Shown in pieces: positions 4,202-9,621 of a stretch of 64,000 nt of DNA; within the stretch, counting starts at the first letter, position 1, and each line of letters opens with the position of its first letter. A program made the translations under genes and the position numbers. The DNA is taken from the sequence record MK568540.2, one strand, 5' to 3'. Under the pieces are notes generated by a model. That model did not search any database and had not been told where the DNA came from. It saw only the letters and a list, made by a program, of their open reading frames with translations.

Positions 4202-4810
4202 TCACATAAAGAAATAGGGATTTTCAAGAGTCTTGAACTCGTTTACGACTGTCATCTTAAACGTCTTAAAGTCGATGTTAAACACTTTATTTGGCTCAAC
4301 ATGCTCTGGAGTTAAAATCGTTCGCGTGCTGCTAAACGATGTACCGTCTTCGCTCATGAACAACGGGCTAATTTCATTGCGAAATACACGCAAATTGCCG
4401 TTAATGAAGTGAAAACAAGCAAACGTACCGTCAAGTTCGTTTAATTTGCCGTAGCAAATCGCTTCAGCAATGTGTGCAGTATCCCATTCTTGAGTCTGAT
4501 TTTTCATGTAATGGTCTTTGAGAATACCATTATGCCACACGTGTGAATCATGCAACTGACCGTTCTCTTCAATTGTTACAATAGCGGGATGTGCTTGAGC
4601 ACTTGTTCCCGTTGGTGCTTGTACATGACAGATATAAAAATCTGCACTATCAGGCACATTAGTTGTATTGAACGCCCCTGTAAACTTGTGAACCGTCACA
4701 TGACCGTTCTTAAACGTACTCACAGAGTGAGTACGCGAACCACGATGAATATTACTCTTTGACAATTCAATAAGCTCTTGCTTGCTTCTAGCAGCAAATA
4801 GTCCACACAT
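4202..4810 (-). CDS. Stand-alone class II (Ntn) glutamine amidotransferase
   Basis: N-terminal MCG nucleophile, HRG, HVQAPT, HP, HNGIL, DT, LDGTFA, R..ISPL; start overlaps the queC stop. Confidence 0.85.
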   Translation of the reverse strand: MCGLFAARSKQELIELSKSNIHRGSRTHSVSTFKNGHVTVHKFTGAFNTTNVPDSADFYICHVQAPTGTSAQAHPAIVTIEENGQLHDSHVWHNGILKDHYMKNQTQEWDTAHIAEAICYGKLNELDGTFACFHFINGNLRVFRNEISPLFMSEDGTSFSSTRTILTPEHVEPNKVFNIDFKTFKMTVVNEFKTLENPYFFM

Positions 4811-5526
4811 TAATGACCTGCCTTAGCAAATACTTGTTCCCATGGGATATCAATCGAGTAAGGTGCTGGGTCTTTAATACCCGCTTTACCGAAGTTCATG
4901 ATGCGTTCAGCACATGACGGACATTTACCACAGCTTTCACCTGCTTCGTTAGGGTCGTAACACGTTAGACTATCTTCAAACGGTACACCGAGCTTAACAC
5001 CAATAGCGATTTCATCTGCCTTTGACATACGAGCGAACGGAGCAAGTAATGCAATCTCGTGTTGACGATTCAGTGCAGATAGATTGTTCATGCCGTCAAG
5101 AAAGTCTTGTGTGCAGTCCCAGTAACCGTATGCGTCATGCACTTGAATGCCAGTAAAAACCGCTGCACAGCCATTTGCTTGCGCGAATGAGAACGCGATT
5201 GTGTTCAATAGCATATTACGATATGGAACTTCAGTTGGCGGTTGAGGGTCGCCTAGAACGTCTTGAATAGTTGGCATAGCAACATCTGAACCAGCGATAT
5301 TTGCACATACAGGTGCTACCACTTCACCTAAGAATGAGATGTCGATTAGACGATGCTCGATACCGAGCTTTTGACAAGTCAATTTAGCTTTTTCTAGCTC
5401 AATTGACTGTTTTTGACCGTAGTAGAACGATAATGCAAACACATTGTCTTTGCCGTATTCATCTACTAGTTTGTACGTAAGGATTGTTGAGTCCAAGCCA
5501 CCGCTTAGAACAGATACTACTTTCAT
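4810..5526 (-). CDS. queC: 7-cyano-7-deazaguanine (preQ0) synthase
   Basis: SGGLDS PP-loop, YGQK, VPYRN, DC, Zn motif TCY...CGKCPSC; start reassigned to 5526 behind a GAGAGG SD. Confidence 0.95.
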   Translation of the reverse strand: MKVVSVLSGGLDSTILTYKLVDEYGKDNVFALSFYYGQKQSIELEKAKLTCQKLGIEHRLIDISFLGEVVAPVCANIAGSDVAMPTIQDVLGDPQPPTEVPYRNMLLNTIAFSFAQANGCAAVFTGIQVHDAYGYWDCTQDFLDGMNNLSALNRQHEIALLAPFARMSKADEIAIGVKLGVPFEDSLTCYDPNEAGESCGKCPSCAERIMNFGKAGIKDPAPYSIDIPWEQVFAKAGH

Positions 5527-5532
5527 TTTTAA

Positions 5533-5570
5533 CCTCTCAAGTATATGAGTGCTCACAATTGAACACTCAT
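5533..5570 (-). promoter_or_regulatory. Stem-loop immediately upstream of the queC SD
   Basis: Minus strand ATGAGTGTTC-AATTGT-GAGCACTCAT followed by ATACTTGAGAGG. Confidence 0.55.
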
Positions 5571-5581
5571 CATAGCTCTTA

Positions 5582-6490
5582 TTACTGACGGAATAAACAA
5601 CTTCCGTTAGTGTGCGAGACAACTTCACTACCAAGTGCTTCTGGTAGTAGTTCTTCATGCGTTGCACGTGCTGGGCAGATATTCCAACCGCCGCGACGTG
5701 TGTATAACGCTGTTACCATAAGCTCTTGTGGGTCGAACTTATCAAGTAACGCTTTGTAAATCATTTCAACACATTCTTCATGGAAATGATTCTCTTTACG
5801 GAATGACACGATGTATTGCATGAGACTGTCAATAGTTGGTGTTTTTTCACCTTTCATGTATACATACAGATCACCGAAATCTGGTTGATGCGTCACGCGA
5901 CAGTTAGAACGTAGATTCGGCGTGAACACTTTCATGCGCTTCACGTGAGATTCTTGCAGTAAATCAGCATCTGCACCGCTTTCTGAGTCGAATACAGTGT
6001 CTTCAGATACGTATTTGTCGAGTTCTGCATACCCTGTCATACCGTGCGGTTGTGTTGATCTGACTGTGAAGAAGCTCACTTGTACTTCAGCACCGATGAC
6101 TTCAGATAGGTCACGCGACGCGATAGCTTCAATTGCACCTTGTACTTCAGCACGAGTCGCAGCGACTTTAGCCATGTTGAAGCTGTTCCAATACAGTTTC
6201 ATTGATTTACTTTCAACGATATTCGGTGAATCGCTTGGGTACACGACTTTCGCCATACCAGATACAGGCAGACCTTGTTCAGTCAGTGCCGATACTTCGA
6301 AGCCATGCCATGTATCAAACCCTGCAAAGTCTTCGTTTGTGATACCGTAATCAGTTCGATTTAGCTCACGCGGGATTGGTACAAGTAAATCTGGTCGAAC
6401 GTCTACGATATTAACGAAATCGCTGTAATCGCCAGCTTTTTTACCTAAATGCTCAGCCGCAATAGCTGATACTTCATCATAATTGCTCAT
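5582..6490 (-). CDS. queF: NADPH-dependent preQ0 reductase, bimodular (Gram-negative type)
   Basis: QueF motif VESKSMKLYWNSF, catalytic SNCRVTHQPD, HFHEECVE, YTRRGG. Confidence 0.93.
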   Translation of the reverse strand: MSNYDEVSAIAAEHLGKKAGDYSDFVNIVDVRPDLLVPIPRELNRTDYGITNEDFAGFDTWHGFEVSALTEQGLPVSGMAKVVYPSDSPNIVESKSMKLYWNSFNMAKVAATRAEVQGAIEAIASRDLSEVIGAEVQVSFFTVRSTQPHGMTGYAELDKYVSEDTVFDSESGADADLLQESHVKRMKVFTPNLRSNCRVTHQPDFGDLYVYMKGEKTPTIDSLMQYIVSFRKENHFHEECVEMIYKALLDKFDPQELMVTALYTRRGGWNICPARATHEELLPEALGSEVVSHTNGSCLFRQ

Positions 6491-6519
6491 GTATACCTCA
6501 TAAAGAGCGCCCGTAGGCG

Positions 6520-7899: not shown

Positions 7900-8568
7900 T
7901 TACCCTCGTGCTAGAGACATGAATTCGGCGCGTGCTTCTGGTTCGGTACGAAATGCACCTGATAGGTGACTTGTAACAGTGCTTGAGTTGTTGTCTTCAA
8001 CACCGCGTGCCTTGACGCAATAGTGTTTTGCGTCGATCAATACTGCCACGTCTTCAGTTTCAAGAATGAACTTCAGTGCTTCAGCGATTTGAACAGTCAA
8101 ACGCTCTTGAATCTGTGGGCGTCGAGCAAAGTACTCGACGATGCGATTCATCTTAGAAAGACCAAGTACTTTCTTATTTGGGATATATGCAACTGTTGCA
8201 AAGCCGTCGATTGTTACGATGTGATGCTCACATTGTGAAAGAACAGTAATGCCTTTTTCACAAACCATCTGATCGTAGTTCATTTTGTTGTCTACAGCAG
8301 TACATTTAGGGAACATATCTGGTGATAGACCGCTCATGAGTTCATTGACCATCATCTTAGCCCAACGCTTCGGTGTATCAACAAGCGAATCGTCAGTAAG
8401 GTCAAGACCTAGAGCTTGCATGATGTCAGTGAATCGATCTTCAAGAATTACTTTCTTTTCATCATCAGTTAGACCGTTTTCAACAGTCGGCGTGTGCATT
8501 CCGATTTCACGAAGATGCGCTTCAACTTTTTGTCCAAGAATTGGATCTACTTTATTTTTGTCTAACAT
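7900..8568 (-). CDS. folE: GTP cyclohydrolase I
   Basis: DTPKRWAKM, SQCEHH, GLSKMNRIV, RPQIQERLT, HYCVKARGV. Confidence 0.97.
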   Translation of the reverse strand: MLDKNKVDPILGQKVEAHLREIGMHTPTVENGLTDDEKKVILEDRFTDIMQALGLDLTDDSLVDTPKRWAKMMVNELMSGLSPDMFPKCTAVDNKMNYDQMVCEKGITVLSQCEHHIVTIDGFATVAYIPNKKVLGLSKMNRIVEYFARRPQIQERLTVQIAEALKFILETEDVAVLIDAKHYCVKARGVEDNNSSTVTSHLSGAFRTEPEARAEFMSLARG

Positions 8569-8597
8569 TCTATTTCCTCTTAGTCAGAAAACAATAA

Positions 8598-8617
8598 TAG
8601 CACGCCGAAGCGTGCTA
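8598..8617 (-). terminator. UUCG stem-loop between queD and folE (attenuator or stabiliser); a similar UACG hairpin lies at 6506-6521
   Basis: TAGCACGC-TTCG-GCGTGCTA. Confidence 0.6.
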
Positions 8618-8635
8618 CTAAACATTAATTGTTGA

Positions 8636-9568
8636 TTACTTATAGAGTAATTCTTTGTTGATTTTGATGTCAACGACTGCGCCTTTCGAAAGACCTTCAG
8701 ATACCCATACACGCTGTACACCCATACGCTGAAACTCGTCTTCGTATGTTTTTGCAATGTAGTTCGCGAGATTTTCAACTGTAGTTTCAGTGTTGATTAC
8801 GATTGTTTCTTCTGAATCGATGTTCAAATAGAAATTACCACGCTGTGAACAATACGCTACCGCACCTTCCGCAGTTAGATTGTCGTTCCATACGATGTAG
8901 CCGCTCATTTCTTCAGCAATGCGCTTTAGTACTTTGCGACCACGACTGTTTAACATGGCATCAACTGCAATGAACGAACGATGTCCATGTGCAATGTTCT
9001 GACACCCATAAGAAGAGCTAGAACGCAAGCCATGAGCGTAATGAAATGAAACGTGCGTGTTTGCCCATGATGGCAAGTCAAAGCTCTCTGAAAGCTCTAC
9101 AGTGACGTGTGTGACCGGATAGCCTTGTAGTTTAAGCTGCTTCAGCAACATATTTTCAAGATACTCGGTTAGATAGTTCATGTACAGCGTATCCGACGGG
9201 ATGTGAAGATCAGTATCGAATAGCGATACATCGACGATCTCTTGATACCAGTCATTGACAGACGAAACAGCAGTGAATAACGGAGAGTCGATTTGTGTAC
9301 GGTCACGATTTTCAATATCGCTTAACACATATTCACTGTATCCGTTGACAAGAACTAGACGGTGATCAATTGCGTGTTCAGATTCGTCTACTAACTGCTT
9401 GATCGCTTTCTTGCAACCGCTGAAGTCAATTACGACTTGCTCAGTTTCATCTACTTCGCCGGTGATTTCAACACATAGATTGTAACTCATACCGTTAATT
9501 TTACCGTTTTCATCAACGTATGCGTGATCGATGCATGTGATGTTGTTTAAAAACATTGTACTTTTCAT
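8636..9568 (-). CDS. queD: Long (tandem T-fold) 6-carboxytetrahydropterin synthase
   Basis: VIDF..CKK..IDH in the N-half; HYAHGL..C..AHGH, TTVENLA and VSEG in the C-half. Confidence 0.85.
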   Translation of the reverse strand: MKSTMFLNNITCIDHAYVDENGKINGMSYNLCVEITGEVDETEQVVIDFSGCKKAIKQLVDESEHAIDHRLVLVNGYSEYVLSDIENRDRTQIDSPLFTAVSSVNDWYQEIVDVSLFDTDLHIPSDTLYMNYLTEYLENMLLKQLKLQGYPVTHVTVELSESFDLPSWANTHVSFHYAHGLRSSSSYGCQNIAHGHRSFIAVDAMLNSRGRKVLKRIAEEMSGYIVWNDNLTAEGAVAYCSQRGNFYLNIDSEETIVINTETTVENLANYIAKTYEDEFQRMGVQRVWVSEGLSKGAVVDIKINKELLYK

Positions 9569-9592
9569 ATGTTTCTCTCTTGTTAAAGCTCT

Positions 9593-9621
9593 ATTATAAG
9601 TCCGAATTACTTATATTAAAC
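9593..9621 (-). promoter_or_regulatory. Class B promoter GTTTAA-N17-TATAAT driving the que/dpd operon; contains the IR TATAAGT/ACTTATA
   Basis: Direct reading. Confidence 0.7.

What the first reader, a model, noticed from the sequence alone, without database searches (positions are those of the whole stretch)
4202..9621. 7-deazaguanine DNA-modification operon with two competing preQ0 branches
Seen: one operon encodes queD, folE, a TGT-fold gene, queF, queC and an Ntn amidotransferase. Established: FolE-QueD-QueE-QueC make preQ0; QueF reduces it to preQ1; GAT-QueC fusions yield archaeosine (G+); DpdA-type enzymes insert these bases into phage DNA against restriction, and such modification has been reported in the vibriophage nt-1. 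Inference: encoding both a QueF reductase and a GAT could produce a mixed modification set (dPreQ0, dPreQ1, dG+ and/or dADG) that may be tunable against different restriction enzymes.
Basis: partly seen in the sequence, partly recalled or inferred. Interest (0 to 1): 0.7.

Follow-up and report, generated by a model that had tools for sequence, protein, structure and literature searches.

The report
Known phage dPreQ1 DNA-modification gene cluster
This is the already characterised gene cluster by which KVP40-like Vibrio phages swap some DNA guanines for the 7-deazaguanine base preQ1; the only unexplained part is a small amidohydrolase gene that always follows queC.

Summary
The window is Vibrio phage Va3 (KVP40-like).

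The system is already known. Phage VH7D has identical QueF, QueC and FolE and 98% identical DpdA2. Published experiments show that VH7D QueF reduces preQ0 to preQ1 and that VH7D DpdA2 inserts mainly preQ1 into DNA. [quoted passage not shown] No dPreQ0, dG+ or dADG was reported.

The "two competing branches, mixed set" idea is therefore not supported. The Ntn gene is not the Gat domain of Gat-QueC. It follows queC in 13 of 14 phage contexts, whether queF, arcS2 or neither is present. It keeps the Cys1 nucleophile, the Asn-Gly oxyanion hole and the Asp, but a Gln replaces the glutamine-binding Arg throughout the family.

My best guess, which is inferred and not shown, is that it supplies ammonia to QueC in an AsnB-like split enzyme. 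I found no description of this pairing in the papers I could search. queE and dpdM lie outside the window.

The parts
8636..9568 (-). queD-like gene (310 aa) with two T-fold halves. The C-terminal half carries the Cys and HGH motif. This is the step from dihydroneopterin triphosphate to CPH4.
   Evidence: Pfam PTPS E=3e-11 (aa 173-299); TIGR03367 QueD E=3e-9 (aa 22-67). The KVP40 homologue is listed as QueD in PMC8056088 and in PMC6884629 Suppl. Data 1. It is 309/310 identical to VH7D.
8595..8620 (-). Terminator-like hairpin with a UUCG loop and a T-rich tail, between queD and folE.
   Evidence: Consensus scan: 11-bp stem with 5 GC pairs. Its function was not tested.
7900..8568 (-). folE, GTP cyclohydrolase I (222 aa).
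   Evidence: Pfam E=1.7e-61; NF006824 E=1.4e-89, above the curated cut-off. It is 100% identical to VH7D FolE.
6520..7896 (-). dpdA2, a DNA guanine transglycosylase (458 aa) that exchanges G in DNA for preQ1.
   Evidence: No Pfam, NCBIfam or PDB sequence hit. The fold is TGT: Z about 19 to Z. mobilis TGT; Foldseek top hit DpdA 7ui4. Family-invariant motifs are D76-SGGLQ, D112-E-I and S264-x-D266-S. It is 449/458 identical to VH7D DpdA2, which inserts preQ1 in E. coli (PMC10516641).
5582..6490 (-). queF, bimodular NADPH-dependent preQ0 reductase (302 aa); converts preQ0 to preQ1.
   Evidence: QueF_N E=2.7e-28 and QueF E=5.7e-20; TIGR03138 E=5e-67. It is 100% identical to VH7D QueF, which complements E. 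coli delta-queF (PMC10516641).
4810..5526 (-). queC, preQ0 synthase (238 aa), a PP-loop ATPase with a CxxCxxC zinc motif; converts CDG to ADG to preQ0.
   Evidence: Pfam QueC E=1.6e-52; TIGR00364 E=9.5e-50, above the cut-off. It is 100% identical to VH7D QueC.
4202..4810 (-). Stand-alone class II (Ntn) amidotransferase-fold gene (202 aa, starts MCG). Its start codon overlaps the queC stop (TAATG). Proposed glutaminase partner of QueC.
   Evidence: AF2 pLDDT 94; Foldseek matches to PurF, GlmS and EgtC. hhalign to PurF 95% and to GlmS 91%. Homologues carry GATase_6/7. The family has 321 clusters at E<=1e-30. queC lies directly upstream in 13 of 14 contexts.

Best explanation
The cluster is the DpdA2-type 7-deazaguanine DNA-modification system of Schizotequatrovirus phages, in its preQ1 version. 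FolE and the QueD-like protein come from this cluster. A QueE-like radical-SAM enzyme is encoded about 77 kb away around the circular genome, outside the window. QueC completes the conversion of GTP to preQ0. QueF reduces free preQ0 to preQ1. After replication, DpdA2 exchanges a minority of DNA guanines for preQ1 (dPreQ1). Elsewhere in the genome a DpdM homologue probably methylates a small part to mdPreQ1. The modification is thought to blunt host restriction. These steps are shown for proteins 98-100% identical to Va3's. The sixth gene is a stand-alone Ntn amidohydrolase, translationally coupled to queC. It is most likely not a second branch. I propose that it hydrolyses glutamine and hands ammonia to QueC. 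Together the two would form a split version of the asparagine-synthetase-B architecture: a class II GATase plus a PP-loop amide synthetase. This would make preQ0 synthesis independent of free ammonia. That step is inferred. I give about 0.9 to the dPreQ1 system and about 0.45 to the role of the Ntn gene.
For: Identity: the window is 100% identical to Vibrio phage Va3, and 99.0-99.2% identical to VH7D, phi-Grn1 and phi-ST2 over 4202-9621. At protein level against VH7D: QueF, QueC and FolE 100%; QueD 309/310; Ntn 200/202; DpdA2 449/458, with all changes in aa 376-416, outside the catalytic barrel.

Published experiments (PMC10516641): VH7D queF restores queuosine in E. coli delta-queF. VH7D DpdA2 gives 2765-3666 dPreQ1 per 1e6 nt in wild-type E. 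coli, about 600-700 dPreQ0 in delta-queF and 50-95 dCDG in delta-queC. phi-Grn1 and phi-ST2 virion DNA holds only dPreQ1 and mdPreQ1. Another Schizotequatrovirus, 6E351A, has 15% of dG replaced by dPreQ1 (PMC12028318).

Folds and motifs: DpdA2 has the TGT fold and conserved Asp motifs.

Ntn gene: it has the class II GATase fold. Cys1, R26-equivalent R23, Asn-Gly (N94-G95), Thr67 and Asp110 (equivalent to GlmS D123) are invariant. The queC stop and the Ntn start overlap (TAATG), as they do in nt-1, L014, L015 and L022. queC then Ntn is conserved in 13 of 14 contexts down to 35% identity: with queF (Va3, pf16, 2.275.O, L008, L014, L016, L017, L020, L022), with arcS2 (nt-1), or with neither nearby (L009, L015, L021). 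QueC shares the PP-loop family with Asn_synthase and NAD_synthase. QueC uses ammonia as its N donor (PMC13082051). Between Va3 and nt-1, QueC and the Ntn protein stay 92% and 90% identical while DpdA2 drops to 63%.
Against: Va3 DNA itself has not been analysed. The reported level in close relatives is low, roughly 0.3-0.4% of G by my calculation from 816 and 668 per 1e6 nt and about 42% GC, so its protective value is unproven.

For the Ntn gene there is no biochemical evidence at all. The Arg that binds the glutamine alpha-carboxylate in PurF, GlmS and AsnB-type enzymes (R73) is an invariant Gln (Q64) in this family, so the substrate may not be glutamine. Canonical QueC works without a glutaminase, and E. 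coli reconstitutions worked without this gene. Gene adjacency shows linkage, not mechanism. The high conservation of QueC and the Ntn protein against nt-1 extends to the next gene (WYL_2, 93%), so it may be regional. The terminator-like hairpin between queD and folE means that a single transcript is not shown.
Confidence: 0.8

Rival explanations
1. QueF and the Ntn amidotransferase are two competing branches from preQ0. The Ntn enzyme, working with QueC like a Gat-QueC fusion, makes archaeosine. The virion DNA therefore carries a tunable mix of dPreQ0, dPreQ1, dG+ and dADG.
For: A class II GATase domain fused to QueC gives dG+ in phage 9g (PMC6884629). The Va3 protein has the same general fold and Pfam class (GATase_6/7) as the 9g Gat domain. 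VH7D DpdA2 is promiscuous, inserting preQ1, then preQ0, then CDG in decreasing amounts (PMC10516641). nt-1, which has the same Ntn gene, does carry dPreQ0, dADG and dG+ together.
Against: phi-Grn1 and phi-ST2, whose Ntn protein is 99% identical, show 0 dG+, 0 dADG and 0 dPreQ0. nt-1's dG+ needs ArcS2 in reconstitution, and nt-1 DNA is mostly dPreQ0 although it has the Ntn gene. hhalign of the family against 9g Gat-QueC gives only 5.7% probability, against 91-95% for GlmS and PurF. The 9g domain keeps the Arg that this family lacks. The gene accompanies queC with or without queF or arcS2.
Confidence: 0.08
2. The Ntn protein is an amidohydrolase with a substrate other than glutamine, or works in another pathway. 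Examples are nucleotide metabolism, trimming a gamma-glutamyl or other amide compound as EgtC does, or hydrating or hydrolysing a deazaguanine nitrile or amide. Its place beside queC would then reflect a shared expression module, not ammonia transfer.
For: The glutamine-binding Arg is replaced by Gln in every member. EgtC, a stand-alone Ntn hydrolase that is not an amidotransferase, is among the structural matches. The genes downstream of it in other phages are often nucleotide-metabolism genes: dCTP deaminase or a MazG-like PRA-PH.
Against: Upstream queC is the one constant neighbour; the downstream genes vary. The Asp that binds the alpha-amino group of glutamine, and the Asn-Gly oxyanion hole, are invariant. 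The start and stop codons overlap with queC in several lineages.
Confidence: 0.3
3. The cluster is an auxiliary metabolic module that only feeds preQ1 into host tRNA queuosine synthesis to tune translation. No 7-deazaguanine enters phage DNA.
For: This was the older reading of queuosine genes in KVP40-like phages, and public records still annotate them that way. The hosts of DpdA2 phages have the full Q pathway. VH7D queF does restore Q-tRNA in E. coli.
Against: dPreQ1 was measured in virion DNA of three relatives, and VH7D DpdA2 modifies plasmid DNA. No QueA, QueG or QueH homologues are found in viruses. There is no tRNA gene in this window.
Confidence: 0.03

Closest known systems
dPreQ1/mdPreQ1 system of Vibrio phages VH7D, phi-Grn1 and phi-ST2 (DpdA2 + QueF + DpdM; Cui, Hutinet et al., NAR 2023, PMC10516641)
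   Same: Same genes in the same order. Identity is 99.0-99.2% at nucleotide level; QueF, QueC and FolE are identical and DpdA2 is 98% identical. Va3 belongs to the same genus.
   Different: Va3 itself has not been assayed. It lacks the homing-endonuclease insertions seen inside the phi-ST2 and phi-pp2 clusters. Its nine DpdA2 substitutions lie in aa 376-416. dpdM was not located in this window.
Vibrio phage nt-1 system (DpdA2 + ArcS2; dPreQ0, dADG and dG+; PMC6884629, PMC10516641)
   Same: It has queD-like, folE, dpdA2, queC and the same Ntn gene in the same order. QueC is 92% and the Ntn protein 90% identical.
   Different: nt-1 has arcS2 (DUF5591) between queD and folE, and no queF. Its DpdA2 is only 63-66% identical, and it inserted preQ0 but not preQ1.
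Gat-QueC of Enterobacteria phage 9g and Crenarchaeota (archaeosine route)
   Same: A class II GATase module is associated with a QueC module. QueC is 25% identical to the QueC half (E=5e-17). Both Gat modules start with MC and have an HNG motif.
   Different: In 9g it is one polypeptide with Gat at the N-terminus. Here there are two genes, with the Ntn gene downstream. There is no significant sequence match between the two Gat modules. 9g keeps the Arg while this family has Gln. The product in 9g is dG+, which was not found in Va3's close relatives.
Asparagine synthetase B, PurF and GlmS (class II glutamine amidotransferases)
   Same: Ntn fold, Cys1 nucleophile, Asn-Gly oxyanion hole and the Asp for the alpha-amino group. 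AsnB pairs this domain with a PP-loop ATP-dependent amide synthetase, the superfamily to which QueC belongs.
   Different: The protein is stand-alone (about 200 aa), not fused. Arg73 is replaced by Gln. There is a family-specific C-terminal NPY(F/Y)F tail and an RNEISPLF motif. No activity data exist.
Bacterial Dpd system (DpdA/DpdB/DpdC; dPreQ0 and dADG in bacterial DNA)
   Same: A TGT-fold transglycosylase acts on DNA. Bacterial DpdA (7ui4) is the top Foldseek match to Va3 DpdA2.
   Different: There are no DpdB or DpdC partners here. Similarity to DpdA is detectable only at the level of fold. The inserted base is preQ1, not preQ0.

Membership tests
Phage DpdA2-type 7-deazaguanine DNA-modification system (preQ1 version) | A DpdA2 transglycosylase with the TGT fold and conserved catalytic Asp motifs | tested here: met
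   VIA-align Z about 19 to TGT over about 300 residues; Foldseek top hit DpdA 7ui4. Invariant D76-SGGLQ, D112 and D266. 98% identical to the assayed VH7D DpdA2.
Phage DpdA2-type 7-deazaguanine DNA-modification system (preQ1 version) | The phage encodes the preQ0 pathway: FolE, QueD, QueE and QueC | tested here: met
   FolE, QueD-like and QueC are in the cluster. QueE-like radical SAM is Va3_235 at record position 174743-175627, outside the window. It is 36% identical to pf16 QueE (E=2e-56); its Radical_SAM Pfam hit is below cut-off and Fer4_12 is above it.
Phage DpdA2-type 7-deazaguanine DNA-modification system (preQ1 version) | A QueF nitrile reductase that turns preQ0 into preQ1 | tested here: met
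   Both QueF domains are present. The protein is 100% identical to VH7D QueF, which complemented E. coli delta-queF (PMC10516641).
Phage DpdA2-type 7-deazaguanine DNA-modification system (preQ1 version) | dPreQ1 present in virion DNA | not testable with these tools
   It was measured in phi-Grn1, phi-ST2 and 6E351A, not in Va3. The public runs that hold this sequence are assembled contigs and carry no modification signal.
Gat-QueC (archaeosine-forming fusion) | An N-terminal class II GATase domain and QueC in one polypeptide | tested here: not met
   They are two genes, with queC first and the Ntn gene second, and a 1-nt overlap. No member among the best 150 family representatives has a QueC domain, and the two longer ones tested do not either.
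Gat-QueC (archaeosine-forming fusion) | The Gat module is orthologous to the Gat domain of 9g or archaeal Gat-QueC | tested here: not met
   BLASTP shows no significant match. hhalign probability is 5.7%, against 91-95% for GlmS and PurF.
Gat-QueC (archaeosine-forming fusion) | dG+ as the product | not testable with these tools
   Published values for phi-Grn1 and phi-ST2 are 0.
Class II (Ntn) glutamine amidotransferase | N-terminal Cys nucleophile and the Ntn alpha-beta-beta-alpha fold | tested here: met
   The protein starts MCG, and C2 is invariant in 25 of 25 sequences. pLDDT is 94. Matches are PurF, GlmS and EgtC at E from 1e-8 to 1e-5.
Class II (Ntn) glutamine amidotransferase | The Asn-Gly oxyanion hole and the Asp that binds the glutamine alpha-amino group | tested here: met
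   N94-G95 aligns with GlmS N98-G99. D110 aligns with the GlmS TDTE and PurF SDSE motifs. All are invariant. The residue numbers for GlmS and PurF come from my own knowledge.
Class II (Ntn) glutamine amidotransferase | An Arg that binds the glutamine alpha-carboxylate (R73 of GlmS and PurF) | tested here: not met
   It aligns with Q64 (H-V-Q-A-P-T against H-T-R-W-A-T and H-V-R-Y-P-T), and the Gln is invariant in the family.
Class II (Ntn) glutamine amidotransferase | Glutaminase activity coupled to an acceptor (synthase) partner | not testable with these tools
   The only support is the conserved adjacency to queC (13 of 14 contexts).

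The most novel reading that the evidence does not exclude
The 202-aa Ntn protein is a previously overlooked seventh component of phage 7-deazaguanine pathways. It would be a dedicated glutaminase (or other amide-donor hydrolase) that docks on QueC and channels ammonia to it, making a glutamine-dependent preQ0 synthase analogous to a split asparagine synthetase B. It defines a large family found so far only in phage contigs: 321 clusters at E<=1e-30, with an atypical Gln in place of the glutamine-binding Arg.
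Probability: 0.4. Interest if true: 0.5.

Novelty: already known. Interest (0 to 1): 0.25.

Why it matters
The main finding repeats published work. It tells an annotator that Va3 almost certainly carries dPreQ1, with traces of mdPreQ1, in its DNA. That is relevant to restriction evasion and to sequencing or cloning of such phages.

The useful residue is the Ntn gene. It is conserved next to queC across many marine T4-like and jumbo phages, yet it is absent from the pathway schemes and gene tables I could read. If it makes QueC glutamine-dependent, it would add a step to a well-studied pathway. It would also explain how phages sustain deazaguanine synthesis when free ammonia is scarce.

Several public records also mislabel the T-fold genes of this cluster, which is worth correcting.

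Tried and rejected
- Motif scans of all window ORFs of 80 aa or more for CxxxCxxC and DpdM-like Cys clusters found no QueE or DpdM candidate in the window.
- tblastn with E. coli YkgJ (DUF3109), meant to locate DpdM in vibriophages, found only unrelated coliphage and Acinetobacter phage hits. DpdM in Va3 remains unlocated.
- phi-ST2's 'DNA methyltransferase' inside the cluster is not DpdM. It belongs to a GIY-YIG mobile insertion.
- Sequence searches of DpdA2 against PDB chains, with a single sequence and with a 36-sequence profile, gave nothing. Only fold comparison recovered TGT and DpdA.
- Direct BLASTP and hhalign of the Ntn family against 9g Gat-QueC gave no meaningful match.
- The supplements of PMC10516641 are not held, and the 2024 MMBR review (PMC10966956) is not held. 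I cannot exclude that the Ntn gene is mentioned there.
- The sequencing-run search found no confirmed RNA run. The laid contigs show only presence, strain variants and one insertion in a relative, so transcription of the cluster as one unit could not be tested.
- Two longer family members (327 and 349 aa) were checked for informative fusions. One has only a DUF3310 tail and the other nothing.

Full report
**Where the window comes from.** Megablast of 4202-9621 gives a 100% match to Vibrio phage Va3 (MK568540.2) at the same coordinates. Va3 is a KVP40-like Schizotequatrovirus of 247.6 kb. VH7D, phi-Grn1, phi-ST2, ValKK3 and R10Z/R11Z match at 99.0-99.8%, and KVP40 at 86%. The record's annotation agrees with the ORF list.

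**The observation.** All six genes lie on the minus strand.
- queD-like, 9568-8636 (310 aa). It has two T-fold halves: PTPS E=3e-11 and QueD TIGR03367 E=3e-9.
- folE, 8568-7900 (E=1.7e-61).
- A 458-aa gene at 7896-6520 with no hit in Pfam, NCBIfam or PDB sequences.
- queF, 6490-5582. Both QueF domains are present, so it is the bimodular type.
- queC, 5526-4810 (E=1.6e-52).
- A 202-aa gene at 4810-4202 that begins MCG.

Gaps between the genes are 67, 3, 29, 55 and -1 nt. A terminator-like UUCG hairpin lies in the 67-nt gap between queD and folE. The queC stop and the start of the last gene share one base, TAATG.

I modelled the two unnamed proteins.
- The 458-aa protein (pLDDT 90.6) matches Z. 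mobilis tRNA-guanine transglycosylase at Z about 19 over about 300 residues. Its best Foldseek hit is the bacterial DNA preQ0 insertase DpdA. Its family keeps the motifs D76-SGGLQ, D112-E-I and S264-x-D266-S. From my knowledge of TGT, these correspond to the catalytic and substrate-binding aspartates D102, D156 and D280.
- The 202-aa protein (pLDDT 94) matches the glutaminase domains of PurF and GlmS, and the Ntn hydrolase EgtC.

No window ORF carries a radical-SAM Cys motif. The QueE-like gene is Va3_235 at 174743-175627, outside the window.

**What is already known.** Hutinet et al. 2019 (PMC6884629) defined DpdA2 from nt-1. Their gene table lists DpdA2, FolE, QueD, QueE, QueC and QueF for KVP40, VH7D, ValKK3, phi-ST2, phi-pp2 and pf16. 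The 202-aa gene is not in that table.

Cui, Hutinet et al. 2023 (PMC10516641) tested VH7D directly.
- VH7D queF complements E. coli delta-queF.
- VH7D DpdA2 puts 2765-3666 dPreQ1 per 1e6 nt into plasmid DNA.
- It gives about 600-700 dPreQ0 when only preQ0 is available, and 50-95 dCDG in delta-queC.
- Virion DNA of phi-Grn1 holds 816 dPreQ1 and 35 mdPreQ1 per 1e6 nt; phi-ST2 holds 668 and 44. All other deazaguanines are listed as 0.

A further Schizotequatrovirus, 6E351A, has 15% of dG replaced by dPreQ1 (PMC12028318).

Va3's QueF, QueC and FolE are identical in protein sequence to VH7D's. QueD differs at 1 residue, the 202-aa protein at 2, and DpdA2 at 9. All nine DpdA2 changes lie in aa 376-416, around a low-confidence loop in the C-terminal helical part. 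The system in the window is therefore, for practical purposes, the published one.

**The 'second branch'.** nt-1, which makes dPreQ0, dADG and dG+, has arcS2 (DUF5591) between queD and folE and no queF, and it also has the 202-aa gene after queC. In E. coli, nt-1 DpdA2 alone gives dPreQ0, and dG+ appears only when ArcS2 is added. So the Ntn gene is present both in a phage that makes dG+ through ArcS2 and in phages that make no detectable dG+.

Against phage 9g's Gat-QueC, the Va3 QueC aligns with the QueC half (25% identity, E=5e-17). The Ntn protein does not align significantly with the Gat half. hhalign probability is 5.7%, against 91% for E. coli GlmS and 95% for PurF. Both modules belong to the GATase_6/7 class.

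**Anatomy of the Ntn family.** In an alignment of 25 homologues down to 35% identity, the following are invariant: C2, R23-G24, H62-x-Q64-A-P-T67, H74-P75, W92-H-N94-G95, K98, W109-D110, R144-NEISP-x-F151, S160-S161 and a C-terminal N-P-Y.

The profile alignments to GlmS and PurF place these residues as follows.
- C2 falls on the Cys1 nucleophile.
- N94-G95 falls on the oxyanion-hole Asn-Gly.
- D110 falls on the Asp that binds the glutamine alpha-amino group.
- Q64 falls on Arg73, the residue that binds the glutamine alpha-carboxylate in these enzymes. This assignment of residue roles is from my own knowledge.

The 9g Gat domain keeps an Arg there. The catalytic machinery is therefore intact, but one glutamine-recognition residue is systematically different.

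A search without a word index finds 321 representative clusters at E<=1e-30. Nearly all are stand-alone proteins of 200-230 aa that match from residue 1. This fits an enzyme that needs a free N-terminal Cys, and it explains why a gene placed after queC cannot be fused to it.

**Context.** I looked at 14 contexts: Va3; nt-1; the unrelated jumbo vibriophage 2.275.O; Pseudomonas phage pf16; and ten metagenomic or assembly contigs.
- In 13 of them queC lies directly upstream, or one small ORF away.
- The start and stop codons often overlap by 1 nt (nt-1, L014, L015, L022), by 8 nt (L009) or by 13 nt (L020).
- The fourteenth contig, L023, ends about 900 nt upstream, so it cannot be scored.
- queF is nearby in nine contexts, arcS2 in one, and neither in three.
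- The downstream neighbours vary: WYL_2, MazG-like PRA-PH, dCTP deaminase, FolE, DpdA2-like or QueF.

The gene therefore tracks queC and not any post-preQ0 branch. Between Va3 and nt-1, QueC and the Ntn protein are 92% and 90% identical. FolE, QueD and DpdA2 are 74%, 75% and 63% identical. The next gene (WYL_2) is also 93% identical, so part of this pattern may be regional.

**Mechanism.**
- *Shown for 98-100% identical proteins:* QueF reduces preQ0 to preQ1, and DpdA2 exchanges DNA guanine mainly for preQ1.
- *Established for the families:* FolE, QueD, QueE and QueC convert GTP to preQ0, and QueC uses two ATP and ammonia.
- *Inferred:* the Ntn protein is a glutaminase-type ammonia donor for QueC. 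The logic is by analogy. QueC is a PP-loop amide-forming ATPase with weak Pfam hits to Asn_synthase and NAD_synthase. Asparagine synthetase B is exactly this kind of synthetase fused to a class II GATase.

I put this proposal at about 0.45, because of the Arg-to-Gln change and because there are no data. I could not model the complex or test transcription. The public runs that hold this sequence are contigs and show only strain variants and one insertion.

**Literature check on the Ntn gene.** Searches for DpdA2 with amidotransferase, for QueC with glutamine amidotransferase or ammonia, for preQ0 synthase with glutaminase, and for KVP40 with queuosine and amidotransferase found no description of this pairing. 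The 2024 MMBR review and the NAR 2023 supplements are not held, so the claim of novelty for this one gene is provisional.

**Verdict.** The system is already known, so interest is low. The exception is the uncharacterised Ntn gene linked to queC.

Noticed in passing
window 6484-6521 and about 7897-7899; L024:3957-4658; L025:2476-4634 and 6144-6845: Two junctions inside the cluster are empty in Va3 but hold mobile-endonuclease insertions in relatives. An HNH/mob-like gene sits between folE and dpdA2 in phi-pp2 and phi-ST2. A GIY-YIG plus methylase-like 552-aa gene, with a 167-aa 'DNA methyltransferase', sits between dpdA2 and queF in phi-ST2. Contigs of run X1 also break at 6484/6521 with unrelated sequence.
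   Followed up: partly
L003, L024 and L025 (the public records of PG216, phi-pp2 and phi-ST2): The annotations of the T-fold genes are swapped or wrong in several records. [quoted passage not shown] QueF is labelled 'GTP cyclohydrolase I family' or '6-pyruvoyl-tetrahydropterin synthase'. The PHROG for QueF is named 'GTP cyclohydrolase'.
   Followed up: no
window 8595-8620 and 11446-11471, minus strand: There are two similar terminator-like hairpins: 11-bp stems, a UUCG loop and a T-rich tail. The first lies between queD and folE, inside the presumed operon.
   Followed up: no
window 6520-7896 (DpdA2 aa 376-416) and 9623-10075 (dCMP deaminase aa 49-69): Differences between Va3 and VH7D are concentrated in short patches. 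All 9 DpdA2 changes fall within 41 residues around a low-confidence loop. Of the 13 deaminase changes, 11 fall within 21 residues. This suggests small recombination patches or a hypervariable surface.
   Followed up: no
window 3917-4192, minus strand: A 91-aa WYL_2 (Sm-like SH3) protein lies directly after the Ntn gene. It is 93% identical in nt-1, the best-conserved gene of the neighbourhood, but it is not next to the Ntn gene in other phage lineages.
   Followed up: partly
L017:3574-4155: A metagenomic T-even-like contig with queF, queC and the Ntn gene also carries a Formyl_trans_N gene close by. This recalls the proposed preQ1 formylase DpdN of fdPreQ1 phages.
   Followed up: no
L007:6476-7105: The jumbo vibriophage 2.275.O places a COG1738/YhhQ-type transporter gene between queF and queC. 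This is the family of the preQ0 transporter, so the phage may import the precursor as well as make it.
   Followed up: no
window 8636-9568: The QueD-like protein is a tandem of two T-fold halves. The Cys and His-Gly-His motif is present only in the C-terminal half. The N-terminal half matches only the second part of the QueD model. No experiment on this double form was found.
   Followed up: no
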